Below are positions 26,201 through 60,679 of a stretch of DNA of 64,000 bases, in pieces. The DNA comes from Chrysemys picta bellii (lineage: Eukaryota): contig NC_088803.1 of assembly GCF_011386835.1 (NCBI RefSeq), positions 5,828,001 to 5,892,000 of the forward strand. The letters are read 5' to 3'. The number at the start of each line of letters is the position of its first letter. Position 1 is the stretch's first letter. Under the pieces are notes generated by a model, which saw only the letters and a list, made by a program, of their open reading frames with translations, did not search any database and was not told the origin of the DNA. The translations under genes and the position numbers were made by a program.

Positions 26201-29200
26201 CAGGCCACCGTGCAGCACACCCCCTGCACGACGCTCGTCCCCGTGCGCACAGCACGGCCCCGGCCAGGCCAGGCCACCGTGCAGCACACCCCCTGCACGA
26301 CGCTCATCCCCCGTGCGCACAACACGGCCCCGGCCAGGCCACCGTGCAACATGCCCCGTGCACGACGCTCGTCCCCCATGCACACAACATAACCCCGGCC
26401 TGGCCACTGTGCAACACGCACCCTGCACGACACTCGTCTCCCGTGCGCACAACACGGCCCCGGCCAGGCCACCGTGCAGCACACCCCCTGCACGACGCTC
26501 GTCCCCCATGCACACAACACGAGCCTGGACACTGCCACCGTGAAACACACACCCTGCACGACGCTCGTCCCCTGTGCACACAACATGACCCCGGCCTGGC
26601 CACTGTGCAACACGCACCCTGCACGATGCTCGTCCCCTGTGCGCACAACACGGCCCCGGCCAGGCCACCGTGCAGCACACACCCTGCACGACGCTCGTCC
26701 CCCATGCACACAACACGACCCTGGACACTGCCACCGTGAAACACACACCCTGCACGACGCTTGTCCCCCGTGCGCACAACACGGCCCCGGCCAGGCCACC
26801 GTGCAACACGCTCCGTGCACGACGCTCGTCCCCCGTGCACACAACATGACCCTGGCCTGGCCACTGTGCAACACACAGCCTGCACGACACTTGTCCCCCA
26901 TGCGCACAACACGACCCTGGACACTGCCACCGTGAAACACACCCCCTGCAGGACGCTCGTCCCCTGTGCACACAATGTAAGAGGATGCACCACACGCCTA
27001 GGTAACACACCCAGCAGGTCCCATCCCCTCCAACGGGGCAGAAGGACATACACTCATGGTCTCTCTCGTCCCCAGGTCTCTGTCTGGGTTCAACTCCAGG
27101 TGCCCCGTATCGAAGACGGCAACAATTTTGGGGTCGCAGTCCAGGTGAGTGTCCCCCCTTCTCCAACCTGCCCCCCACTTACCCCCCCAGCTCATTAACC
27201 CCCCCTCTCCCCCTCCCCAGGAGAAGGTGTTTGAGCTGATGACGGGCTTGCGGACGAAGCTGGAAGGATTTCAGACCCAGATCTCCAAGTGAGTCCCAAT
27301 TTTGGGGGACCCCTTCCACACCCAAATCCAAGCCAGGGACCCCTCCCACCCCCGTCCCATCAACTTGGTTAAAAGCAAAACAAAGAATCAACCAACCACC
27401 CACAAGAACCAAGAATATTCAAGGGCAAAACCGGCTGTTAAATGCAGGGGGGAAAGAGCTTGACAAATCCAAAGGAGTTAAATGCCAAAAACCCTTGAAA
27501 GGAAAAATTGGATTTTTTTTCACAAAAGCAAGGAATCGAAATGGCAACAAACTTCATTCAATGCAACCTTTTAAGCTCACAAAAATCCCAAGGAAATTAA
27601 ATCCCAAACGCTGCGCCCAATGCCGAGACATTTATTTAAAAAAAACAAGGAAATTAAATGCCCAAAATGCTCATTAAAAACAAACGTGGCGTTTTTCCAA
27701 CAAGCAGGAATTCAAATGCCACATTTTGTGGAAATGCAAATTTTTAAGCTTGCCCCAAAAAGGAGGCAATTAAAACGACACCAATTTTGTTCATTTTTGT
27801 AATACTCTGCAAAAGAGAGGAAGTTTTAATGTAAAGGGGTGGGGGAGCTTTGTTCACAGCAAAAGTTTTAGGGTCATCAGGAACCAAGGACATTTTAATG
27901 CCTAAATAACTTCGTTCAATGGGAAAACGATGAGCATTGACCAGACGGAACATTTTAATGCAAAATCTTTGTGAAATGTGACATGTTAAGGTTGCAAAAA
28001 GACCATTTTGCATTTCACAGGTTGTTGTTTTTTCTTTTTCATTAACAATTAGAACGTTTGCATTTAACTAAGTTGTCGACCTTTAAGTTTTGGTGGCCGT
28101 TTGGTTTGGTTTTTCGGAGAACTGAAAAATTTCCACATAAATTTAATTTTAAAAAGCCTGTTTAAAAATCAAATTTGAGTTTATTTGGTTGTTTCTGCAG
28201 CCTTAAAGTTTTGCACTTCAAAGGGGTTTTCCATTAAAATTCTGTTTGTTTGCAAAGTACAGTTTGTCCATTTGAAATGTTTTCACATTTGTTTTTCCAA
28301 GTTAAATTGGCCTTTAGTTTTATCCAAAACAATTGTTTCCTCAGTCCCTTTGCAGCCATTTTCTGAATTAAATGCAAAAATTTTAATGTGCAAAAGCCAA
28401 ACTAAGGAAACTAAAATGCAAACAAACAAACAAACAAACAGGTATTTTCACACCCTCAGTACGTTCCCTTTTCTATGCATTAAAATTCCCTAATTTTGCA
28501 GGTTTATTTTTTTACTTTGCACATTTTCCTGCATTTAATTTTTGTTTCAGAACCATAAAACTTGCATTTCATAACATTTGTTTGCATTAAAAATTTCTCC
28601 CTACCAGCACACATTTCCCCCCAAGCTTAAAATGTGCATTTTAAATTGCCTCCTATTTAAAACAATCTTAATATTTTGCATTTAGCAACCATTTGTGCAT
28701 TACAATGATTTTGACTTCACAACCTTGATATTTGATATTTTAAGAAGTTTTGCATTACAATTTTTCCTCTCCTTTGCAGCCTTCATATTTTGTAATTTAA
28801 AAAGGAAGTTAAAATGCACAGTGTCGGTAGATCGAAAAAACATTAAATGCAAAATGTGAAGGATGCAAAGGGGAAGGTTACTGTAAAAAAAAATTGTTCA
28901 ATGCAAACGTAAAGATTGGAAAAATATTGTGTGTGTTAATTTCCTCGTTATTGGAAATTAAAATTCTTGCACTTTAAAAAAAGTAAAAAACATTACATGC
29001 AAAATCTTTAAGCCACAATCCTACGAATACTTATACATGTGCTTGACTTTACTCCTGGGTGTTAGTATCACGGGTAATAGACCTAACATTAAGCCCAGGT
29101 ATATGTGTTTGTGGAATTAGCAACTGAATTTGCAATTTAAAAAAGCTGTGAAGAGTAAATGCAAAAATTGTTAAATGCAAAATTATCCTGCCCCCCCCAA

Positions 29201-30806
29201 AGGAAATTAAATGCAATAAAACTTAGTTTCCACATAACATTTAAGCTTGAAAACTAGCAAAAAAAATAGTTAGTTTCCAGAATGCAAAAAATTTTTGTCA
29301 GATGCAAAACATTTTAGTTCATCATGTTTTTGCACGTGCAGTTCTGTGTTATGAATCGAATTTGAGGTCCGTACAAGGAGCCATAATACTTTGCAGGGAC
29401 CAGTATTTGTGCACATTGAAATTCCTTGGTCACTGGTGTTCCCTCAAGATTGAAAATAAAATCGGAAATGCCAAATTTTTAATCTTGCAAAACCAAAGCC
29501 TCCCCCGAGGAAACGTAACAAGCCTAATGCCGCTCAATGCCAAATCAATGAACGCGGCCAAGAGGGTTTGAATGCAAATCCAACTTTGTTACCTGCAGAT
29601 CGTTTCCTGGTTCGGGGGGGCGCGTTACATTTTCTGCAATTTTGTTAAGTTAGGAGGGTAGAAAACAAGGAAATTCTCACTGCCCCAAAACTTCATGACG
29701 GTCACACAGTGGAGAGATTGGGCTACCCTTGTAGGGGGAGCCACCTGCAAGGCGCCCCCCGCAATGAGAGCCCCCTGCTCGTCCTTCCTCACCCCCAATT
29801 TGGGGCTTCAGCTCTGACTTCTGATTCCCCCGCCACACATAGGTATTTTTCCGAGAGAGGCGACGCAGTGGCTAAAGCGGCCAAAAATCCTCACGTGGTG
29901 AGTGTCTGGGATGGGTGCAACCGCCCGGACGCCTGGGTTCCCTGCTGTGCGGGAGAGGGGGTGCCCAGACACCAGGGTTCTCCACTGTGTGGGAGGGGGA
30001 CCAGGGTTCTCCACTGTGTGGGAGGGGGGGGGCGCCCGGATGCCAGGGTTCTCCACTGTGCGGGGGGAGGTGTGGGGGTGCCCGGATGCCAGGGTTCTCC
30101 ACTGCGTGGGGGGGGGGGCACCCGGACACCAGGGTTCCCCACTGCACAGGAGGGGGACTGCCCGGAAGCCTGGGTTCCCAGCAGGGGCTCTGGGACACCA
30201 GGGATGGTGGGGGAGACACTGGGCCCCTCATTTCCCTGGTTCTGTCCCCCACAGGGTGATTACCGGCAGCTGGTGCACGAATTGGACGAGGCGCAATACG
30301 CTGAGATCCGGCTGATGGTGATGGAAATCCGGAACCTCTACGTGAGTGGGGGGGGTGGGGGGAATCAGAGGGTTCGGCCAGGGGGATTGAGGGGAATAGC
30401 TGGGAGAGTGCAGTGAATGGGGAGGGGGGGGCAGCTTCTCTTCTGTGTTGTAACCCCGTCCCCCCACTTCTCCCCTGAACCCCCATTCCACTCTCAGGCT
30501 GCCCCGGCCTCAGCCATCTGGGAAGGGAGAGACAGCCGAGTTGGGGGGCTTTTCTGGGAGGGAGCGGGTTTGGGGGGTGAAGGCCAACATTAATGGACCC
30601 CAGAAGACCTGGATCCCCCAGGGTAGGGACTTGGGGACAGAGGTGAACCCCTAATTTAGCCTCACCCCTAGAAGCCGGCAGCACCCTAATCCTAGACCGA
30701 CTCCCCCATCTCCTCCCACCCCCAGGCCATTCTCTATGACATCGTGGTCAAGAACTTCGAGAAGATCAAGAAGCCACGGGGCGAAACCAAGGGCATGATC
30801 TACTGA
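23213..30806 (+). CDS. PSME1: Proteasome activator PA28 alpha, 250 aa
   Basis: 11 exons: 23213-23251, 24456-24488, 24609-24671, 25307-25408, 25699-25756, 25873-25970, 27076-27144, 27221-27288, 29843-29897, 30255-30341, 30726-30806. KEKE region, activation loop PRIEDGNNFGVAVQ, C-terminus KPRGETKGMIY. Confidence 0.96.
25996..26980. repeat. 65-bp CpG-rich VNTR, about 15 copies, PSME1 intron 6
   Basis: Unit ccggccaggccaccgtgcaacacgcaccctgcacgacgctcgtcccccgtgcgcacaacacgg. Period measured from 26051 to 26116. Confidence 0.95.
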
Positions 30807-42133: not shown

Positions 42134-45100
42134 ATGGCGCAGGCGGTCCCCCCCCTCGGGGAGCCCCAGTTCCTGCAGCTGCGGGAGGAGTTGGTGCAGG
42201 CGCTGGCCCAGAGCCCGGTGGATCTGCACCCCGAGACTGTCCAGCTGCTGGTCGAGGCCCCCCTGCCCCCACACGTCAAGTACCGGGAGATTGACGCCCA
42301 GGGCATCCTCCGTGCCAACATGCAGGGGCAGGTAGTGCTGGGCTGGGGGGAGGACATGGGGGGCAGGTGGAGGGAGAGTTGGAGGGCAGGAATGGGGGAC
42401 TGGGGAGGGGGTGTTGGGGGGCAAATGGGGGGTGAGGGCGTTAGTGGTAGGGCTGGGGGCTGGGGAGGGGGCATTGGGGGGCAAATGGGGGGCATGGGGG
42501 ATTTGGGGAGGAGGAGTGGGGGGCTGGGGAGGGGAGGAGCCATTGGGGCGGATGTGGGGGGGAGTTGGGGGCAGGAGTGGGGGGTTGGGGAGGGGAAGGG
42601 GGAAGATGGCAGGTGGGGGAAGTTGGGGACAGGAATGAGGGGCTGGGGAGCAGGTGTTGGGGGCAGATGGCAGGTGGGGGAGTTGGGGGGCGGGCCTGGG
42701 GAGCAGGCGTTGGGGGCAGATGGCAGGTGGGGGAGTTGGGGGCAAGAATGAGGGGCTGGGGAGCGGGCGTTGGGGGCAGATGGCAGGTGGGGGGGAGTTG
42801 GGGGGCGGGGCTGGGGAGGGGAGGGGGCATTGAAGGCACTGAAGGGGGTCAGCAGCAGCGGGGCTGGGATGGGGGTTGGGGTTGTAAGAGGGGGACTGGG
42901 AGGGTGAGAGGGGATGGGGCAGAGGCAGGAGGGGTAGAGGGGCTCTGCGGGAGGGGCAGAGTCAGGGGTGGGGGAGGGATTGGGGAGCTCTGGGTGGGAG
43001 CGGAGGGGCAGAATGGGGGGCTCCTGGCAGGAGGGGAGTTGGGGGGGAAAAGGGGGGCAGGGTCTCCGCTCTGGGCTGCCCCTCATGCCCCCCATTGCTC
43101 CCCAGCCCCCGGCCTGCCTGCGAACCATCTCCACAGCCCTCAACATCCTGGAGAAATACGGGCGCAACCTACTGAACCCCCTGAAACCCCGCTACTGGCG
43201 CGGGGTCAAGTTCAACAACCCCGTCTTCCGCAGCACGGTCGACGCCATCCAGGTGGGACCTCGGCCCCCGGGCCTCCCTAAGCCCCCAGTGCCCCGAACC
43301 CCCCCCCCGGCCCCTCTCCCCAGGGCCCAGATCGCCCAGCCCCTGACCCCCCCGAATCCCCCAGCCTGTGGACTCCCTGGCCCCAGATCACCCAGCTACA
43401 CTGAACCCCCCAGGATTGCCCAGCCCCCCCGAACCGCAGTACCCAACAAACTTGGCTTTTTCAGCATGGATGAAGCCAGGTGAGACCCCCAAATACGCGT
43501 TCTGGTCTGCGGAATCCCCCCAGCTCCTGAACCCCACTCACTCCCTGTACGCCAATATCCAATAACCCCATATTCTGCAGCAGGGTCGACACCATACAAG
43601 TGAAAGCCCGAACCCCCAACCCCAAATCTCCCAGACCTGCGATACCAACACCACCGTCCCCCCCCAATCTCCCAGCCCCCCAGTTACCAACACCCTGCCC
43701 CCTAATCTCCCAGCCCCCCAGTTACCGACACCCCCGTCCCCTGAATCTCCCAGCCCCCCAGTTACCAACACCCTGCCCCCTAATCTCCCAGCCCCCCAGT
43801 TACCGACACCCCAGCCCCCTGAATCTCCCAGCGCCCCAGTTACCGATACCCCCTCAATCTCCCAGCCCCCCAGGTACCGACACCCCCGCCCCCTCAATCT
43901 CCCAGCCCCCCATTTACTGACACCCCCGCCCCTCAACCTCCCAGCCCCCCAGGTACCGACACCCTAGTTCAGAGGTGGGCAAACTATGGGCTGCGGGCCA
44001 CACCCGGCCCATGGGACTGTCCTGCCCGGCCCCTCCCCTGCTGTCTGGCTGCTCGAGCCGGGCGGCGCGGCTCAGGGGTGAACACAGAGTGCCCTGGCCG
44101 GCCCCCGGCACTCGGGCAGCTCAGCGCCGGTGCCCCCCGCAGCGGGGGTGGGGTGAGCAGGGAGGGAGGCTCACCCGCAGCCTCCGGGGAGCAGGCGGGG
44201 GGTGCAGGTGGTGGGAGCGCAGGGAACGTGGCGGGAGGACGCAGGAGGACACCGGGCGGCCGCGCAGCCGGGTGGAGAGAAGCGGTGCTTTGAAGGGGAA
44301 ACCGCCCCCTCTCTCTGGCTGTGCGGCTGCCCCTGCTCTTTCTGAGTCCTCCGCCGTGTTCGCAGGGCCACATTCCCAAAGGAGCTGGGGGGGTGCCAGG
44401 GGGCCGTTAGGGGTGGGAGGTCCCGGGGGGTGGTTAGGGGCAGGGGGGTCCCGGGAAGGGGGGGGGCAGGGGTCAAGGAGCAGGGGGGTTGGATGGGTCA
44501 GGAGTTCTGAGGGGGGCAGTCAGGGGCCGGGAAGTGGGAGGGGGCACATAGGGGGCGGGGGCCAGGCTGTTTAGGGGGGGCACAGCCTTCCCTACCCAGC
44601 CCTCCATACCGTTTTGCAACCCCAATGTGGCCCTCGGGCAAAAAGTTTGCCCACCCCTGGTCTAGTTACATCCCAGCCCCCCTCCCCCCATATTTCCCAG
44701 TCCCGAAGGTACCGACACCCCCGTCCTCCCAGCCCCCCAGTTACTGACACCCCCGTCCCCTGAGCCTCCCAGCCCCGAAGGTACCGACACTCCCGTCCCC
44801 CCCAAATCTCCCAAACCCCCAGTTACTGACACCCCCATCCACCAACCTCCCAGCCCCAAAGGTACCGACACTCCCGTCCCCCCCAAATCTCCCAAACCCC
44901 CAGTTACTGACACCCCCATCCCCCGACCTCCCAGCCCCAAAGGTACCGACATCCCCGCCCCCTCAACCTCCCTGCCCTCCAGTTACTGACACCCCCATCC
45001 ACCAACCTCCCAGCCCCAAAGGTACTGAAACCCCCATTCCCCCAAATCTCCCAAACCCCCAGTTACTGACACCCCCGTCCCCTGACCTCCCAGCCCCGAA

Positions 45101-48100
45101 GGTACCAACCTCCCAGCCCCCCAGTTACCAACAACTCCCGCCCCCTCAACCTCCCTGCCCTCCAATTACCGACACCCCCATCCCCCCCAAATCTCCCAAA
45201 CCCCCAGTTAGACATCCCCGCCCCCCCAACCTCCCAGCCCCCCAGTTACCGACACCCTAGTTACACCCCAGCCCCCCGATCCCCCCCAGCCCTGGTTCTA
45301 ACGCGGCTCCTCGCAGGGCGGGCGGGACGTGCTCCGTCTCTACGGCTACACGGAGCAGCAGCCGGACGGGCTGAGTTTTGCCGAGGGGCTGGAGGAGCCG
45401 GACGCCCGGCGCGTGGCCTCCGTCACCGTGGACGTGGTGCTGCTGAGGGCCGAGCTCAACATGCTGCTCTCGGTAGGGGGCGCCGGGGGACGGGGGGGGC
45501 TGGACGGGTAGGGCTGAGCAGGAGGTGCTGTGGGGAAGGGAGCAGGGTGGGGACAGGGTAGGGGGCTGAGCAGGGGGTGCTGTGGGGCAGGGTGGGGGCT
45601 GAGCAGGAGGTGCTGTGGGGAAGGGAGCAGGGTGGGGGCAGGGTAGGGGGCTGAGCAGGGGGTGCTGTGGGGCAGGGTGGGGGCTGAACAGGAGGTCCTG
45701 TGGGGCAGGGAGCGGGGTGGGGTGGGGGCTGGGCAGGGGGCACCGTAGGGCAAGGAGCGGGGTGGGGGCTGAGTCTCATTGTGTCGTTTCCATTTCAGAA
45801 CAATCACCCGAACCCCGATATCCTGCAGGGAATGCTGCAGGGGGGGCAGGAGGTGAGGAGGGGCAAGTGGGAGGGGATCTGGGGGTGGAGGGCAGGGGCA
45901 GGGTTGGGAGAGGTAGGGCTGGGATGAGGCGTAGGGCTGGGCGGTCGGGTGGATCGAGGGGTTCGGCTGGGCCTGTCACCTCTTCATCTCTTCCAGGTGA
46001 CCCTCATCCCGGACTCGGTGCCCGTCCATGACACGGCGCCCCCCGGAGCCTTGCCCCAGACGGGTACGTGCCACGGGGCGCCATGGGGAGTAGGGCACAG
46101 GGAGCTCTGTCTGTGAGGAGAGCACGGGGGGAGCCATGGGCCTGGGGAGTGGGGGTGCTGTGGGGCATGGAGGTGGCTCTGGCTGTCGGGGGTGCTGTGG
46201 GGCAGGGCGGTGGGGACTGGGAGCAGAGGAGCACCGGCTGGGGGACGCTGTGGGGAGAGGGCGGGGGCACTGTGGGGCTGGGGAGTGGGGGTGCTGTGGG
46301 GCACAGAGGGGGTTCTGGCTGTGGGGCAGGGCAGTGGGGACTGGGAGTGGGGGACCACTGGCTGGAGGACATGGGGGGGCTGGGCTGTGGGGTGATCCCT
46401 CTCTCCCACCCCCCAGGGCCAGCCCCCCCGGCCACCTGCCTGCTGTGTGGGATGGAGCCAGCGTCCCTGCTCTGCCCTGAATGCAACCAGAGTCTCTGCC
46501 CCGAATGCGACCGTCTCTTCCACAAACACCCAGCCCGGGCCCAGCACCGGCGCCTGTCCGTGGGGGAACTGGGCTTGGGGGCTGGGCCCCCTGCACAGAG
46601 GTAACGGGGATCCCCCTGAGCCACCCTGCCCCCAGGTATTGGAGCCCCCCACCCTGAGCCCCCCAGGATACAAGGACCCCCTGAACCCTGTTCTGCCCCC
46701 ATAGAAGGGGCCCCCTCTGTGACCCCTGAGCCCCCGATAATGGGGACCCCCTGATCCCCCCCCAGGACTTGGGTCCCTCCTGAACCCTATTCTACCCCCA
46801 GGCAATACATGAATTATGATTACAAATGAATTGAAACATTGAAAATTACATTTGAAATAAAAATAAAGAAATGTAAAAAAAAAAAAAAAAAAAGAAGTTT
46901 CCTACTGAACTGGCCGTAATTCCTGAGCCGAAACGGTGATTCAAATGAACTGGCTCATTAAACTTTACGTTCCGAATGCGATTTCTTCTCCCTTTAACTC
47001 CCAGACTGCAAAATTAACAAATTACAGTCAAACTGCAGTCCGAGGGAATACAAAAATAAATAAATGGAAACTAAAACTAAAAATCACGGCTTTGCCCCAA
47101 TACTCAGGAAAATCCCCCAAATCAGTGAGAGCTGGACCTGAAGCAGGACATTTCCGATGCTTTCGATGTTTTTTCTTCTTTGTTTAGTAACGCCCCCCCC
47201 CCCCCGAGATCAGGTGAATTGCAATTCAAAAAGAAATCAAGTGAAATTAAAAATTCAATTTCCAATCAAAATAAAAGCTGTCGATTTTTGACAACTGTTT
47301 CATAACAGCTTTGCCATAAAGCGACGTGCGTCTGATGCAGAACAGATCCCAGCAGCTAATCAAGGGGAAGTTTTCCATTTCCAACACGGTCGCTGATTTT
47401 CCTGGTTTTCTCTCTCGTTAAGAGAGACAATTATCAAATACACGAATGACCGTGAGAAAGAACAGCGGGTGAAATAAAAAACGAAACGCAAATTTCCTGG
47501 CAAATAAAACGCCAAGTGAACGAATTTGATTCAAAATTCACTACCAGAAAAGATTCAATTGAAAATAAAAATGAAAAATGTACATTCTAAAACCCAGGCT
47601 TGAATATTAATGACTAAAATGAAGAAAATGCCCCCCCCCGCCCCCCGAATTGGTGGCTCGATCATGGGCAGCAGTTTTCCGCGCTGGCTTTTTTAAATAA
47701 AAGCCCAAATTCTTGGGGGCCAACAGGTGCATCACAGGGGGGACCTGGCTCTCAGGGGGATCACCCAGCTGCCCACACCCCAACACAGCAAGTCAGTGAG
47801 GGGAACCCGCTCGCTCGCGGAGTACGGCCCCATTCAGACAACAGGCCCCCTCGTTTGGGGGACCCCCTGCCTGGCCCCAATCCCCCCTTCCCCCAGGTGT
47901 TGGGGTCCCCCTGCCTGATCCCCCACCTCTAGGTATTGGGGATCCTCTGCCTGACCCCAATCCCCCATCCCCCAGGTGTTGGGGTTCCCCTGCCTGATCC
48001 CCCACCTCTAGGTATTGGGGATCCTCTGCCTGACCCCAATCCCCCCTTCCCCAGGTGTTGGGGTCCCCCTGCCTGGCCTCTCAGTCACCCCGGCCCAGGT

Positions 48101-51100: not shown

Positions 51101-54100
51101 CCATGGGAGATGCGGGGGGGGATGCAGGCAGGGGGGAACCAAGGGGCCATGGGGGCTGCGGGCGGGGAGAACTGTGGGGTGTGGGGGGACCCAGGGGTGC
51201 TGACACCCTCTCCCCTCAGGCACTGCTGCGGCGGCTGCTGGCCTCGCTGGCGCTGCCCAGCTGGGGGCGGGCGGAACTGGTTCTGTCGCTGGTGCGGGAG
51301 CAGGAGGTGGTGGAGAACCGGGGGAGGCCGGCGGCCTTGGCCGACATCGTAGACGCCGTGCGGGCCTCCCCCGACCGCGACTTCATCAAACGCCTGCTCA
51401 ACTGGGAGTGCGCTGTGTGCGGCTGGGCGTTTCCCCGCAACCAGGTACCCCCGCCGGGCACTGCACCCCCCTGCCGGCCGGGCACGATCTCCCCGCCGGG
51501 CACTGCCACCCCCTGCCGGCCGGGCACGACCCCCCACCCCACTCCCGCCGGGCACTGCCAACCCTGCTGGCCAGGCACGATCCCCCCACCGGGCACTGCA
51601 CCCCCCTGCCGGCCGGGCACGATCCCCCCGCCGGGCACTGCCACCCCCTGCCGGCCGGGCACAACCCCCACCCCACCCCCGCCGGGCACTGTACCCCCCT
51701 GCTGGCTGGGAATGATCCCCCCGCCGGGCACGGCCAACCCTACTGGCCAGGCACGATCCCCCCGCCGGGCACGGCCAACCCTACTGGCCAGGCACGATCC
51801 CCCCGCCGGGCACTGCACCCCCCTGCCGGCTGGGCACGATCCCCCCGCTGGGTACGGCCACCCCCTGCTGGGCAGAAGCGACACCCCACCCCACCCTACC
51901 CCCGCCGGGCACTGCACCCCCCTGCTGGCCGGGCACAATCCCCCCACCGGACACTGCCAACCCTGCCGGCCGGGCACGATCCCCCCGCCGGGCACTGCCA
52001 CCCCCTGCTGGCCAGAAACGACACCCCACCCTACCCCCGCCGGGCACTGCCAACCCTGCCGGCCAGGCACGACCCCCCCCCGCCGGGCACTGCCACCCCC
52101 TGCTGGCCAGAAACGACACCCCACCGCACTCTACCCCCGCCGGGCACTGCACCCCCCTGTGCTGGCTGGGCCTGTCTCCGGTCCCACACCTGCGGCGTTC
52201 CCGCCGCCGAATTGCCGCCAAAAGCCCCCTGACTGCCGTGCTTGGGGCAGCAAAATACATAGAGCCGCCCCTGGCGGGACCCCCAGCCAGGCTTGTCCCA
52301 TCCTTCCTCCGCCAACCAGTCGCATCCCCCTCCCCTCCGCCGGCCGGGAGCGTCCCCCTTTCATGAGCCTGGTGGGTCCCCCCAAGATACGTCCACCCAG
52401 CAGACATCCCTCCCTCTGTGTCCCTCCCGTGTGTCCCCCCGAGATGCGTCTTCCCCGACAGGCCAATTCCCGGCCCCGTCTGAGCCGCGTCCCCCCCAGA
52501 CACATCCCCCCCACAGCTGGCCAATTCCCGGCCCCGTCTGAGCCGCGTCCCCCCCAGACACATCCCCCCCAACAGCTGGCCAATTCCCAGCCCCGTCTGA
52601 GCCGCGTCCTCCCCAGACACATCCCCCCCGCAGCTGGCCAATTCCCGGCCCCGTCTGAGCCGCGTCCCCCCCCCAGACACATCCCCCCAACAGCTGGCCA
52701 ATTCCCAGCCCCGTCTGAGCCGCGTCCCCCCCAGACACATCCCCCCCGCAGCTGGCCAATTCCCAGCCCCGTCTGAGCCGCGTCCTCCCCAGACACATCC
52801 CCCCAACAGCTGGCCAATTCCCGGCCCCGTCTGAGCCGCGTCCCCCCCAGACACATCCCCCCCACAGCTGGCCAATTCCCGGCCCCGTCTGAGCCGCGTC
52901 CCCCCCCAGACACATCCCCCCCAACAGCTGGCCAATTCCCGGCCCCGTCTGAGCCGCGTCCTCCCCAGATGCAGTCGCTGACGTCCTGCGAATGCACCAT
53001 CTGTCCCGATTGCTTCGCCCAGCACTTCACCATCGCTGTGAAGGAGAAACACATCACGGACCTGGTGTGTCCGGCCTGCGACGCGCCCGACCTGAGCGAC
53101 GAGGCCGAACTGCTGGGCTACTTCTCCACGCTGGACATCCAGGTACGGGGCCCAAGAGCCCCCGCAATCTCCTGGGGACCCCCAAACCTCCCAGGGGCCC
53201 CTATACCCTCTCTGAGTCCCCCCAATCCCCTGAGGCCTCCCCGAACCTCCCTGAAATTCCCCCAAGCCCCCAACCCAACCTACTTCTCCATGCTGGACAT
53301 CCAGCTCCCCGGAGCCCCCCAAACCCCTGAACTCCCCTGAGCACTCCAAATGCCCAACCCCCCCAAATCCAGTGGACATGCAGGTTCTGGGAGACCCCAA
53401 AGCCCACTCCCACCCCCAGTTCCCCTGAACCCCCACAGCTGTGGCCCTCATGCCCAGGTATTGGGGTGACCCTGCGCCCCATCCCCACACACTCCCAGGG
53501 GTGAGCACCCCATCCCATGCCTGGGAGCCCCCTGCACCCAGCCTCAGGGGTGGGGCACCCCAAAAAGGCAGGGGAGCTCCAGAAGCCCCTGCTCACCCCT
53601 CCCCTTCCTCCCCCAGCTCCGCGAGTGCCTGGACCCCGAGATCTACGAACTGTTCAGCAAGAAGCTGACGGAGCGTGAGCTCATGCGGGACCCCAAGTTC
53701 CAGTGGTGCACCCACGTGAGTGGGTGGGGCCCCAGGGCCAGGGGCGGGGCCAAGCCAGAATGCTGGGGGGGGTCAGAGTGCCAGGGCGGGGCCAGAATGC
53801 TGGGGGCGGGGTCTCAGTGCCAGGATGGGGCCAGAACTCAGGGGGCGGGGCCAGTGGACAAGGGTTGGGGCTGGGGGCGGGGCCAGAATCCCAGGGGACG
53901 GGGTGGGGCGCACAGGGCAGGGGGGTTTGGTGGGGGGGAAGAGGAGGTGTGTGACAGGGGAGGGGTCATTGGCGGGGGCCTGTGGGGGTCTCTTGGGGGG
54001 CATCTGAGGGGGGAGTCTCTGGGGGGAGACTGTGGTGGTTTCTCGGGGGGGCTGTGGGGGTCTCTCGGAGGGCCTCCCTCTCTCTCTCACCCCCCCTTTC

Positions 54101-57100
54101 CCTCTCCAGTGCTCGTTCGGGTTCATCTACGAGTCGGAGCAGGCGGCCGCCCAGTGTCCCCAGTGCAACCAGAGCTTCTGCGTCCACTGCAAGCGTGCGG
54201 TGAGGGGAGGCTGGGGGGGCTGGAGGGGAGGGGGCGGGGCCTTGAGAAGTGGGGGACAAGGACAAGAGGCAGAAGCTCCAGTGTCGGGTAGTTCCGCAGG
54301 CTCTGGCGGGGTCCGGCTAGGCAGAGTGTGTGTGGGGGCTGGGCATGGAGGACCGGGGGGGCTGTGTGGGTGGCGGGGGGGGATGAGGCCATGCTGACCC
54401 CCACATCTCCCCCCGCAGTGGGAGCCGCAGCACCAGGGCCTGTCTTGCCAGGAGTTCCAGGAGTGGAAGAGAACCAACGACCCCCAGTACCAGGCACAGG
54501 GGCTGGCGGTGTACCTGCAGGAGAATGGAATCGGTGAGCTCCCCCTGCTCCCCCCCACAGCCCCCCATCCCCCCAACCCACCCCCCAGTACCACGCACAG
54601 AGGCTGGCGGTGTACCTGCAGGAGAATGGAATCGGTGAGCTCCCCCTGCTCCCCCCCACAGCCTCCCATCCCCCCAACCCACCCCCCAGTACCACGCACA
54701 GGGGTTGGCAGTGTACCTGCAGGAGAATGGAAACGGTGAGCCCCCCCTGTTCCGCCCCACAGCCCCCCATTCCCACAGCCCCCCAGTACCACGCGCAGGG
54801 GCTGGCACTGTACCTGCAGGAGAACGGAATCGGTGAGCCACCCCTATTCCCCCCCACAGCCCCCCAACCCGCCCCCCAGTACCAGGCGCAGGGGCTGGCA
54901 GTGTACCTGCAGGAGAATGGAATCGGTGAGCCCCCCCTGTTCCCCCCCACAGCCCCCCATCCCCACAACCTGCCCCCCAGTACCAGGCGCAGGGGCTGGC
55001 GGTGTACCTGCAGGAGAATGGAAACGGTGAGCCCCCCCTCTTCCGCCCCACAGCCCCCCAGTACCACGCGCAGGGGCTGGCACTGTACCTGCAGGAGAAC
55101 GGAATCGGTGAGCCACCCCTATTCCCCCCCACAGCCCCCCAACCCGCCCCCCAGTACCAGGCGCAGGGGCTGGCGCTGTACCTGCAGGGGAATGTAATCG
55201 GTGAGCCCCACCGTTCCCCCCTACAGCCCCCCATCCCCCCCAACCCGACCCTCAGTACCAGGTGCAGGGGCTGGCGCTGTACTTGCAGGAGAACGGGATC
55301 GGTGAGCCCCCCCGTCGCTCCGCACACACTCCAAGCCCCCCTACTCCTTGGCCCCCTCTCCCAGTGTCCCCCCCCCAGGGGCTGCTGGGTTGTGGGGTGG
55401 CTCCTGCCCCCCTGTTGACTCCCCCCCACCTCTCTCTCACCAGCCTGCCCCAAGTGCAAGTTCCCATACGCGCTGGCCCGGGGAGGCTGCATGCACTTCC
55501 AGTGCTCCCAGTGCCGGCACCACTTCTGCAGCGGCTGCTACGGGGCCTTCCACACCAAGAACGTAAGGGGGCCGGGGGGGCTGTGTTGTGGGATTGTTGC
55601 GGGGGGGGGGTGGGTTTGTTGTGGGATTGTTGGGTGTTGTATTGTGGGGTTATCAGGTGGTGTGTTCTGTTGGGTGTGGTGTTGGGGGGGGACAGGGGTT
55701 GTGGTGTGGGGTTGTCAGCGCGGCTGTTGTGGGGCTCTCAGGGGTTGTGGGGGGACACAGAGGTTGTGTTGTAGGGTTGTTGGGTGGGTTGCTGTGGGGG
55801 TGTTGGGTTTGTTGGTAGGTGTTGGATAGGGAATGGGGTAGTATTGTAGGGTTGTTAGGGGTGTTGGCTTGGTTGCTGGGTGTTGGGTGGGGTTGGGAGT
55901 TGTGGTGTGGTGCAGGGTTGTCGGGTGTGGGTTTTGGGTTGGTTGCTGGGTGTGGGATTGTCAGGGGTTGTGGGGGGGGGAAGGAGCTTTTGTTGTAGGA
56001 TTGTTAGGTGGGGTGGTTGTCAGGGTGTTGGGTTAGTTGTTGGGTGTGGGGGTGTCGGAGGTTGTGCAAGAGTTGGGGTTTGTGTTGTAGATTGTTGGGT
56101 TTATTGTAGGTATTGGGTGGGGAATGGGGGTAGGGTTGTTAGGGGGTGTTGGGTTGGTTGCTGGGTGTTGGGTGGGGATGGGGGTTGTGGTGTGGGGTTG
56201 TCGGTTGTGGGTATTGGGTTGGCTGTTGGGTGTGGGGGTGTCGGAGGTTGTGCAGGAGTTGGGGTTTGTGTTGTAGATTGTTGGGTTTTATTGTAGGTAT
56301 TGGGTGGGGAATGGGGGTAGGGTTGTTAGGGGGTGTTGGGTTGGTTGCTGGTGTTGGGTGGGGATTGGGGATGTGGTGTGGTGGGGGGTTGTCGGATGTG
56401 GGTGTTGGGTTGGGTGTGGCGCTGTCGGGGATTGTGGTGTTGTGGCGGGTTGGGTTGGGCTGTCAGAGGGTTGGGGTGTAGAGAAAATCTCTGTATTTAT
56501 CTCTATAAATCTTTATGACATTGCATCTTGCATGATGTTATTTTGTATTTCATATGACTTGGCCTTGTGCCTCTCTATTTTCATACAACTTTGGATTAGA
56601 TCCTGTATAGAAAATTGGTAGAAAACTTTGTATCAAATGTTCTAGCCCCAAAGGCTAGTCTAGTTAAAGTAAAAGAAACGTGGGCCTTTTTGCTAGAAGT
56701 AGAATAAGCTCTTCCCCCACTCGGTAATCAATTGCCCCATTGACTGAATGAGGTGTGAATGAGTGAGGCTTGGAAGACCCCCACCTCCGGACACCTACAA
56801 CAGTTGGAGAGGGCTGGGAGCCAGAGCAAAGGACAATCCAAGTCCTCAGGTGGGCCCAGTAAAGAAGAGCGGACATATTGACGGCCTCCGGGATTACAAG
56901 CGAGCACCTGCTTCAGAAAACCCCTCTTGGAGCAGCACTGGGACAACACCTAGAGAAGAGCAGCACAAAGACCGGCGGACGCAGACCGGCGGACGCAGAC
57001 ACAGATTTTGAATCTGGTCTAGATTTGCATAAGAGGAAAGCTGCTATAAAAGTGAGGTGTCTTGCAGAGGACCCCGGGTCTCGTCTTGTCACCATCGGAG

Positions 57101-60179: not shown

Positions 60180-60679
60180 NNNNNNNNNNNNNNNNNNNNN
60201 NNNNNNNNNNNNNNNNNNNNNNNNNNNNNNNNNNNNNNNNNNNNNNNNNNNNNNNNNNNNNNNNNNNNNNNNNNNNNNNNNNNNNNNNNNNNNNNNNNNN
60301 NNNNNNNNNNNNNNNNNNNNNNNNNNNNNNNNNNNNNNNNNNNNNNNNNNNNNNNNNNNNNNNNNNNNNNNNNNNNNNNNNNNNNNNNNNNNNNNNNNNN
60401 NNNNNNNNNNNNNNNNNNNNNNNNNNNNNNNNNNNNNNNNNNNNNNNNNNNNNNNNNNNNNNNNNNNNNNNNNNNNNNNNNNNNNNNNNNNNNNNNNNNN
60501 NNNNNNNNNNNNNNNNNNNNNNNNNNNNNNNNNNNNNNNNNNNNNNNNNNNNNNNNNNNNNNNNNNNNNNNNNNNNNNNNNNNNNNNNNNNNNNNNNNNN
60601 NNNNNNNNNNNNNNNNNNNNNNNNNNNNNNNNNNNNNNNNNNNNNNNNNNNNNNNNNNNNNNNNNNNNNNNNNNNNNNN
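60180..60679. other. Assembly gap (500 N)
   Basis: Run of n in the sequence. It sits where the last RNF31 exons and 3'UTR are expected. Confidence 1.

What the first reader, a model, noticed from the sequence alone, without database searches (positions are those of the whole stretch)
54419..55310. Array of eight in-frame-substitutable mini-exons copied from RNF31/HOIP exon 15
Seen in sequence: after exon 15 there are eight further 46-nt copies of its 3' part, at 54589-54634, 54690-54735, 54787-54832, 54880-54925, 54981-55026, 55062-55107, 55155-55200 and 55256-55301. Each is preceded by a C-rich tract ending in CAG and followed by GTGAG. None has an indel or stop, whereas the spacers vary (55, 55, 51, 47, 55, 35, 47, 55 nt). 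The copies encode variants such as [45 protein letters not shown] and [15 protein letters not shown]. Each starts in phase 0 and ends in phase 1, exactly like exon 15, so exon14 > mini-exon > exon16 is in frame and deletes 23 aa ([10 protein letters not shown]...NDPQ, which includes the last IBR zinc ligands) just before catalytic RING2. Established knowledge: spacers this short are below normal vertebrate intron size, so neighbouring copies could not be joined, which is a steric route to mutual exclusion. Extending exon 15 to any downstream donor gives a frameshift or stop. Inference: this is either a nascent mutually exclusive exon cassette tuning LUBAC activity, a set of decoy donors feeding NMD, or a silent VNTR. 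Copies 4 and 7 are near-identical and copies 3 and 6 share the ...AAC G ending, which suggests real higher-order duplication rather than read error.
Basis: partly seen in the sequence, partly recalled or inferred. Interest (0 to 1): 0.85.

Follow-up and report, generated by a model that had tools for sequence, protein, structure and literature searches.

The report
Silent exon-junction minisatellite in turtle RNF31
The end of one RNF31/HOIP exon, together with its splice donor, has been copied eight more times head to tail into the following intron of a painted-turtle gene; this is a known kind of tandem repeat, and every assembled transcript examined ignores the copies, so it is probably harmless.

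Summary
Window 54481-55313 is a 93-101 bp minisatellite with a 275-bp higher-order period. Its first unit is the last 46 nt of RNF31 exon 15 plus the donor GTGAGC. Eight more units follow, each with an identical donor.

The functional reading is not supported. In three RNA-type runs from three studies, one contig joins 54199>54419 and 54533>55444 and nothing else. The 46-nt block varies as much as the first 33 intron bases. All length changes sit in C-runs at the spacer end. dN/dS is not significantly below 1. The acceptor-like CCCCCCAG tract is itself a copy of the exon codons for N-D-P-Q.

An independent DNA sample holds copy-specific junctions, and the unit is unique in the genome, so the array is not an assembly artefact.

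This kind is known in human F7, LMNB2, PDGFA, CBS and IFI6, and as "exon stuttering" on chicken dot chromosomes. The genome matches painted turtle SLU_Cpb5.0. The window is 22.5% minisatellite.

This scan had already noted similar arrays in other genes of this genome. I verified one, in SLC7A8.

The only mild novelty is that stuttering-type arrays occur in a turtle.

The parts
54110..54199 (+).
   Evidence: RNA contig pieces and GT..AG joints; Pfam IBR_1/IBR match
54419..54533 (+). RNF31 exon 15, 115 nt. The first 69 nt encode the end of the IBR, including the His-x4-Cys. The last 46 nt are unit 0 of the array
   Evidence: Joints 54199>54419 and 54533>55444 in X19, X30 and X34; phmmer to human RNF31 structures 5edv, 6sc5 and 2ct7
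54534..54539 (+). Authentic 5' splice site GTGAGC. It is the only donor used in the assembled transcripts
   Evidence: Joint 54533>55444 with GT..AG ends in three RNA-type runs
54481..55313 (+). Minisatellite of nine units of 81-101 nt with a 275-nt higher-order period. Homology to the exon probably starts near 54474
   Evidence: TRF; unit alignment; the only locus in the genome; BLAST of the exon end; junction comparison
54589..54640 (+). Copy 1 of the exon end (46 nt, [15 protein letters not shown]) plus pseudo-donor GTGAGC
54690..54741 (+). Copy 2 ([15 protein letters not shown]) plus pseudo-donor; position -3 is A
54787..54838 (+). Copy 3 ([15 protein letters not shown]) plus pseudo-donor. 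The whole 93-nt unit is identical to copy 6
54880..54931 (+). Copy 4 ([15 protein letters not shown], same peptide as the exon) plus pseudo-donor
54981..55032 (+). Copy 5 ([15 protein letters not shown]) plus pseudo-donor, followed by the shortest spacer (35 nt)
55062..55113 (+). Copy 6, identical to copy 3, plus pseudo-donor
55155..55206 (+). Copy 7 ([15 protein letters not shown]) plus pseudo-donor
55256..55307 (+). Copy 8 ([15 protein letters not shown]) plus pseudo-donor. It is the last unit and runs into unique intron sequence
   Evidence: an X2 contig over 55218-55438 bridges it to unique sequence
55444..55562 (+). RNF31 exon 16, the start of the catalytic RING2 (CPKCKF...)
   Evidence: phmmer to human RNF31 structures 4ljo and 4ljp; Pfam IBR_1

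Best explanation
This is a young, locally born minisatellite whose first unit spans the exon 15 / intron 15 boundary of RNF31.

Origin (inferred). A segment of about 101 bp was duplicated in tandem, probably by slippage or unequal exchange between C-runs. It held roughly the last 50-60 nt of the exon, the donor GTGAGC and about 41-48 nt of C-rich intron. It was then amplified to nine units, most recently as a 275-bp three-unit block.

Splicing (shown). The assembled transcripts use only the most upstream donor, so the eight downstream copies are removed with the 910-nt intron and the protein is unchanged.

Look of the copies (inferred). Each unit looks like a mini-exon as a by-product of what was copied. 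The AG and its C-tract come from the exon codons for N-D-P-Q. The donor is the real donor. The open frame survives because the copies are young (about 90% alike) and lack homopolymer runs.
For: - Anatomy.
- Splicing: in X19, X30 and X34 (three studies, two organism labels) a single contig of 2.9-3.6 kb at depth 40-81 joins 53715>54110, 54199>54419 and 54533>55444. No other contig from these runs lies on the stretch.
- 14 RNA-type runs all hold the same 0.19 of the sampled words. About 0.16 is expected if they hold only the three exons.
- No sign of coding constraint.
- Reality of the array: an independent DNA sample, X2, covers all bins. Its contigs show no differences across the junction of copies 2 and 3 (54711-54839) and across copy 7 and its spacer (55145-55247), and one contig bridges copy 8 to unique intron.
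- The unit occurs only here in the genome.
- The assembly's size and sequence count equal those of SLU_Cpb5.0, which was built from HiFi reads of about 14 kb.
- Background: 22.5% of the window is minisatellite, in 26 arrays. A second exon-end-plus-donor array lies in SLC7A8, 283 kb away.
- Precedent: F7 IVS7, LMNB2 and PDGFA use only the first donor (PMC1557585). Exon stuttering is described in chicken (PMC12954441).
Against: - Contigs drop rare variants, so use of a pseudo-donor or mini-exon at a few per cent, or in one tissue, is not excluded.
- The RNA runs carry organism labels D and B, whereas the best DNA holders carry label A. The exons are identical or differ by one letter, but the presence of the full array in D and B is only inferred from word shares (0.46-0.58).
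- dN/dS of 0.36 (P=0.064) leans weakly towards constraint.
- Copy-number polymorphism was not measured.
Confidence: 0.8

Rival explanations
1. Decoy donors or poison pseudo-exons. A minority of transcripts use a downstream donor or include a 46-nt unit, are frameshifted, and are degraded by NMD. This would lower HOIP output either as noise or as regulation.
For: All eight pseudo-donors equal the authentic site from -2 to +6 (CG|GTGAGC), and two are closer to consensus at -3. Every such product is frameshifted or stopped. In human IFI6 and CBS the first two pseudo-sites are used (PMC1557585). Contigs cannot show rare forms.
Against: No contig carrying such a joint appears in three runs at depth 40-81. 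In F7, LMNB2 and PDGFA identical downstream donors stay silent. The mini-exon acceptor tracts have 0-3 T in 25 nt, against 3-7 for the three real acceptors.
Confidence: 0.12
2. Nascent mutually exclusive cassette. Exon 14 splices to one 46-nt unit and then to exon 16, giving HOIP isoforms that lack 23 aa and carry variant linker helices.
For: The phases match, and all eight substitutions read through in frame.
Against: No such transcript appears in the contigs. The deletion removes the final His-x4-Cys of the IBR; exon 14 stops at IBR profile position 57 of 65, and the solved IBR construct 2ct7 covers the first 20 residues after the initial Trp of exon 15. Only 40% of the exon is copied. There is no selection signal. 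The acceptor is a copy of coding sequence. The same kind of array recurs in unrelated genes.
Confidence: 0.03
3. Assembly expansion or artefact. The true intron holds fewer units.
For: Short-read contigs of X2 break up inside the array, and some run on into unlike sequence.
Against: Copy-specific junctions are recovered without a difference in an independent sample. The assembly is built from HiFi reads far longer than the 833-bp array. The units differ from each other by about 10%, so they are not collapsed or expanded identical copies.
Confidence: 0.03

Closest known systems
Human LMNB2 intron minisatellite (10-15 repeats of a 100-bp monomer that reiterates the exon/intron junction; de Stanchina et al. 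1997, as cited in PMC1557585)
   Same: The unit length is about 100 bp, and the first unit spans the exon/intron junction. The donor is reiterated, and only the authentic upstream donor is used.
   Different: The gene and taxon differ. Here there are nine units with a 275-bp higher order. I could not read the LMNB2 paper itself.
Human F7 IVS7 37-bp VNTR (Borensztajn et al. 2006, PMC1557585)
   Same: The first monomer spans the exon-intron boundary. Identical pseudo-donors follow and stay silent. The most upstream site is selected.
   Different: The F7 unit holds only 4 exon bases, so it does not look like a mini-exon. F7 polymorphism (5-9 repeats) and pseudo-site competence were shown by experiment; neither was tested here.
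Exon stuttering within 'sequence stuttering' on chicken dot chromosomes (PMC12954441, 2026)
   Same: It is a local tandem expansion of an exon edge plus its splice site into the adjacent intron of a GC-rich, repeat-laden gene. The exon part (46-60 nt), the copy number (8) and the span (833 bp) all fall inside the published ranges (20-187 bp, 1-44 copies, 112-23,555 bp).
   Different: That paper describes birds (and gerbils), says the phenomenon was not found in other vertebrates, and ties it to dot chromosomes. Here the genome is a turtle's, and the locus lies 5.8 Mb into a 55.6-Mb sequence.
IFI6 (6-16) 12-nt and CBS IVS13 31-bp junction minisatellites (as summarised in PMC1557585)
   Same: A minisatellite at the exon/intron border reiterates the donor.
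   Different: In those genes the first two pseudo-donors are used constitutively. No such use is seen here.
Mutually exclusive exons born by tandem exon duplication (from my own knowledge: Kondrashov and Koonin 2001; Letunic et al. 2002)
   Same: The copies are tandem, have a compatible phase, and are too close together to be spliced to each other.
   Different: In that class whole exons of equal length are duplicated, transcribed and conserved. Here only the last 40% of the exon is copied, with no transcript and no constraint.

Membership tests
Minisatellite whose first monomer spans an exon-intron boundary (F7 / LMNB2 / PDGFA / CBS / IFI6 type) | Head-to-tail tandem array of units of 10-100 bp | tested here: met
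   TRF finds periods of 101/93 nt, nine units and 81-88% matches
Minisatellite whose first monomer spans an exon-intron boundary (F7 / LMNB2 / PDGFA / CBS / IFI6 type) | The first unit contains the exon's 3' end and the authentic 5' splice site | tested here: met
   The transcript joint 54533>55444 falls inside unit 0
Minisatellite whose first monomer spans an exon-intron boundary (F7 / LMNB2 / PDGFA / CBS / IFI6 type) | The donor sequence is reiterated in the intron | tested here: met
   CG|GTGAGC occurs eight more times
Minisatellite whose first monomer spans an exon-intron boundary (F7 / LMNB2 / PDGFA / CBS / IFI6 type) | Only the most upstream donor, or the first few donors, are used | tested here: met
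   Only 54533>55444 is seen in contigs of three RNA-type runs. Rare use cannot be excluded with contigs
Minisatellite whose first monomer spans an exon-intron boundary (F7 / LMNB2 / PDGFA / CBS / IFI6 type) | Copy number varies between individuals (VNTR) | tested here: inconclusive
   X2 has a second contig over 55070-55247 with 8 differences at about half depth, either an allele or an extra unit. No read spans the array
Sequence / exon stuttering (PMC12954441) | Highly repetitive introns with local tandem clusters | tested here: met
   22.5% of the window, and 25.3% of 46-60 kb, is minisatellite of period 30 or more
Sequence / exon stuttering (PMC12954441) | The copied exon fragment abuts the exon border and is copied into the adjacent intron | tested here: met
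   The source ends at the last base of exon 15, and all copies lie in intron 15
Sequence / exon stuttering (PMC12954441) | Extensive intron length variation within the species | tested here: inconclusive
   X2 lacks 42 nt in the intron 13 array (53741>53784) and shows small indels elsewhere. That is one individual, and contigs only
Sequence / exon stuttering (PMC12954441) | Located on an avian dot chromosome | tested here: not met
   G000 has 2,372,089,908 bases in 9,850 sequences, matching painted turtle SLU_Cpb5.0 (2.372 Gb, 9,850). The locus lies on a 55.6-Mb sequence
Mutually exclusive tandem-duplicated exons | Whole-exon duplicates of equal length | tested here: not met
   46 nt are copied from a 115-nt exon. 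The first 69 nt have no copy
Mutually exclusive tandem-duplicated exons | Alternative copies are present in transcripts | tested here: not met
   None in three runs' contigs. Rare forms are untestable with contigs
Mutually exclusive tandem-duplicated exons | Purifying selection on the copies | tested here: not met
   Variable columns 8/46 against 6/33 in intron (p=1). dN/dS 0.36, P=0.064, or 0.62 without CpG transitions
Poison-exon / NMD-coupled unproductive splicing | Frame-disrupting inclusion products that are detectable and rise when NMD is blocked | not testable with these tools
   The products would be frameshifted, but raw reads and NMD-blocked samples were not available.

The most novel reading that the evidence does not exclude
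The pseudo-donors or 46-nt units are used at a low level or in particular tissues. This would give NMD substrates, or an IBR-truncated HOIP, that set LUBAC dosage. More broadly, junction minisatellites of the 'stuttering' type would be a recurrent feature of GC-rich turtle genes with some effect on splicing, rather than a phenomenon confined to birds.
Probability: 0.08. Interest if true: 0.55.

Novelty: new member of a known kind. Interest (0 to 1): 0.25.

Why it matters
For RNF31 itself it matters little, because the protein-coding transcript is untouched.

It is a clean natural example of nine equal 5' splice sites of which only the first is used. That makes it suitable for minigene tests of how a donor is chosen.

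There are now two verified cases, RNF31 and SLC7A8, on one turtle sequence, and the scan holds notes of several more. Together they suggest that the exon/intron 'stuttering' recently described as specific to birds also occurs in a turtle. This bears on when and why GC-rich regions became unstable in sauropsids.

Annotators should also expect false mini-exon or isoform predictions at such arrays.

Tried and rejected
- Constraint on the 46-nt block. I compared nucleotide diversity (0.089-0.100 in the block, 0.127 in aligned spacer columns), the share of variable columns, the position of indels, dN/dS and the chance of seeing no stop. None singles out the coding-like part.
- Paralogous copies elsewhere. 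A whole-genome search with one 101-nt unit found only this array.
- Odd X2 loose-end sequence. TGCCACAGCCCTTAAACCCA is not in the window, even with 3 mismatches. It remains unexplained; it may be a graph tangle or an allele.
- Other donor-like arrays in the window. The arrays at 43608-43964 and 44718-45122 have units containing CAGGTACC or AAGGTACT. I saw no adjoining exon at the first and did not follow them further.
- Asymmetry between donor-side and acceptor-side arrays. A look-up in the scan's notes gave nothing usable.
- Turri et al. 1995 (PMC306954) is not held, so IFI6 is cited only through PMC1557585.
- Exon 15 alone has no Pfam hit. Its assignment to the IBR rests on the profile positions of exon 14 and on PDB entries 2ct7 and 5edv.
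- Species identity of the coded run organisms could not be resolved.
Full report
**1. What is in the sequence**

Exon 15 ends in a 46-nt block (54488-54533). Eight further copies of that block begin at 54589, 54690, 54787, 54880, 54981, 55062, 55155 and 55256. Each copy is preceded by a C-tract ending in CAG and followed by GTGAGC. The spacers measure 55, 55, 51, 47, 55, 35, 47 and 55 nt.

Tandem Repeats Finder reports one array over 54481-55313. Its periods are 101 and 93 nt, with a 275-nt higher-order period (2.9 copies, 88% matches). Units 3 and 6 are identical over all 93 nt. The two 275-nt blocks 54787-55061 and 55062-55336 are 90% alike.

The flanking exons are RNF31/HOIP. Exon 15 matches human RNF31 structures 5edv and 6sc5 (E = 4e-15). 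Exon 16 matches 4ljo and 4ljp (E = 1e-17). Exons 14 and 16 hit the Pfam IBR families.

**2. The arithmetic of the mini-exon idea**

The arithmetic is correct. Exon 15 is 115 nt, and each copy is 46 nt. Both begin in phase 0 and end in phase 1. Exon 14 > copy > exon 16 is therefore in frame for all eight copies and removes 23 residues.

Extending exon 15 to donors 1-7 shifts the frame. Extension to donor 8 keeps the frame but meets a stop.

The 23 residues include His-x4-Cys. Exon 14 reaches only position 57 of 65 in the Pfam IBR profile. The solved IBR construct 2ct7 covers the first 20 residues after the initial Trp of exon 15. From the known C6HC pattern of IBR domains, these two residues are the last zinc ligands. 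A substituted isoform would therefore have a damaged IBR.

**3. What the transcripts do**

I laid three RNA-type runs (X19, X30, X34; three studies, organism labels D, D, B) and one DNA run from an independent sample (X2, label A) on 53600-56000.

In each RNA-type run exactly one contig lies on the stretch. These contigs are 2.9-3.6 kb long, at depth 40-81. All three show the same three GT..AG joints: 53715>54110, 54199>54419 and 54533>55444. No contig from these runs touches any downstream copy.

In the second run search, 14 RNA-type runs from at least five studies all hold the same 0.19 of the sampled words. That is close to the 0.16 expected if they hold only the three exons.

There are two limits. 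Contigs drop rare variants, so minor isoforms are not excluded. The RNA runs also carry different organism labels from the best DNA holders. The exons are identical or differ by one letter. DNA runs of labels B and D hold 0.46-0.58 of the words. That is more than the non-array part alone could give in the narrower stretch, so at least part of the array is present in those organisms.

**4. Is the coding-like block constrained?**

I found no evidence that it is. After aligning the nine units:

- Pairwise diversity is 0.089-0.100 in the 46-nt block and 0.127 in aligned spacer columns.
- The first 33 nt of the spacer (GTGAGC...CACAGCCCCCC) are as free of indels as the block, with one 1-nt gap in one unit.
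- All length variation falls in the last 22 or so columns. These consist of C-runs of 4-7 and short internal repeats, which are the slippage-prone part. The block itself has no run longer than 4.
- Variable columns number 8/46 in the block and 6/33 in the first 33 intron bases (Fisher p = 1.0).
- Of 13 variable sites in the block, 7 change the residue and 6 do not. This gives dN/dS of about 0.36 with one-sided P = 0.064.
- Four of the 13 sites are CpG transitions, and three of those are silent. Without them the ratio is 0.62 (P = 0.36).
- Only 9 of 135 possible single changes create a stop. Seeing no stop after 13-30 changes has probability 0.13-0.41.

**5. Where the 'acceptors' come from**

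The bases just upstream of the block in the exon read CCAACGACCCCCAG, the codons for T-N-D-P-Q. The end of each full spacer reads CCAACCCACCCCCCAG. The acceptor-like AG and much of its C-tract are therefore copies of coding sequence that have since gained small indels.

The original duplicated segment was thus about 101 bp, running from about 54474 to about 54574. It held roughly 60 exon bases and 41 intron bases. C-runs at both ends could have mediated the first slippage; this last step is inference.

The pseudo-acceptor tracts carry 0-3 T in 25 nt, against 3-7 T for the three real acceptors. The pseudo-donors equal the real donor from -2 to +6, and two of them match the consensus better at -3.

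**6. Is the array real?**

- X2 is a different sample and study from the likely source. It covers all 30 bins.
- X2 contigs show no differences across the junction of copies 2 and 3 (54711-54839) and across copy 7 and its spacer (55145-55247).
- One X2 contig links copy 8 to unique intron (55218-55438).
- X2 also has a second contig over 55070-55247 with 8 differences at about half depth. This is either an allele or an extra unit.
- X2 lacks 42 nt in the neighbouring intron 13 array (53741>53784). That hints at length polymorphism.
- One 101-nt unit finds only this locus in the whole genome.
- The genome has 2,372,089,908 bases in 9,850 sequences. These are the figures published for the painted turtle assembly SLU_Cpb5.0, which was built from HiFi reads of about 14 kb (bioRxiv 10.1101/2025.04.01.646645). 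Earlier follow-up notes of this scan also call the genome painted turtle.

**7. Context**

The window is crowded with minisatellites. There are 26 arrays of period 30 or more, covering 22.5% of it.

The scan's notes list similar arrays of an exon end plus its donor in CFB, SLC7A8, RDH5, RELA, RAB13, RBM14 and GPC2 of this genome. I fetched the SLC7A8 locus, 283 kb upstream, and confirmed it. On the minus strand a 50-residue exon ends in ...RPIK and matches human LAT2 (7b00, E = 2e-24). It runs into 13.4 copies of a 60-nt unit, and each unit holds the exon's last 28 or so bases plus GTGAGC (L009 616-1412). The other cases I did not check.

A process that produces such arrays in many unrelated genes argues against a purpose-built cassette in any one of them.

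**8. What is known**

Borensztajn et al. 2006 (PMC1557585) review minisatellites whose first monomer spans an exon-intron boundary:

- F7 IVS7 has a 37-bp unit in 5-9 copies, and only the first donor is used.
- LMNB2 has a 100-bp unit in 10-15 copies, and only the authentic donor is used.
- PDGFA has an 81-bp unit.

With 50 constructs, they showed that the F7 pseudo-sites are competent but are pre-empted by the most upstream site.

A 2026 paper (PMC12954441) names the same pattern 'exon stuttering' on chicken dot chromosomes. In that paper the exon parts are 20-187 bp, there are 1-44 copies, and spans are 112-23,555 bp. More than 90% of sources abut the exon border, and 95% of such introns vary in length. 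The authors state that they did not find the pattern in other vertebrates, apart from gerbils. The RNF31 array fits all the size ranges, but it lies in a turtle, on a 55.6-Mb sequence.

**9. Verdict**

The best explanation is a silent junction minisatellite, removed with the intron because the first donor is chosen (confidence about 0.8).

Low-level decoy use remains possible (about 0.12). A mutually exclusive cassette and an assembly artefact are each unlikely (about 0.03).

It is a new member of a known kind. The modest wider interest is that turtle genes show the 'stuttering' pattern so far reported for birds.

Noticed in passing
L009:616-1412 (G000:C13:5544115-5544911), minus strand: The SLC7A8 (LAT2) exon ending ...RPIK runs into 13.4 copies of a 60-nt unit made of the exon's last ~28 nt plus GTGAGC, at 95% identity. 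It has the same architecture as the RNF31 array.
   Followed up: yes
L009:2140-2383, minus strand: A 131-nt unit is present 1.9 times in the same gene. It appears to hold an exon-like stretch ending in ...GTG|GTGAGC, so it may be a very young exon-plus-donor duplication.
   Followed up: no
window 1-64000: 26 separate minisatellite arrays (period 30 or more, score 250 or more) cover 22.5% of the window. G-rich and C-rich units alternate by region. This resembles the 'sequence stuttering' described for chicken dot chromosomes.
   Followed up: partly
window 53741-53784 (array 53754-53854, intron 13): The independent DNA sample X2 lacks 42 nt here, about one unit of the 39-nt repeat. This is a likely length polymorphism between individuals.
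   Followed up: no
window 55070-55247: X2 holds two contigs here, one identical to the window and one with 8 differences at similar depth. This is either a heterozygous array allele or an extra unit missing from the reference.
   Followed up: no
window 54481-54892: Several X2 contigs leave the array into sequence that is not in the window (for example TGCCACAGCCCTTAAACCCA between 54774 and 54551). They may be de Bruijn graph tangles or an alternative arrangement. This is unexplained.
   Followed up: partly
window 43608-43964 and 44718-45122: Two C-rich arrays have units that contain donor-like CAGGTACC or AAGGTACT. I found no adjoining exon at the first.
   Followed up: partly
window 56023-56417: A 186-nt unit is present 2.1 times (92% matches) in the G/T-rich intron after exon 16.
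   Followed up: no
window 60180-60679: A run of 500 N (a gap or masked stretch). I left it as it is.
   Followed up: no
window 28001-30000: GC content drops to 0.38 in a window that otherwise runs at 0.55-0.73. This may be an inserted element.
   Followed up: no
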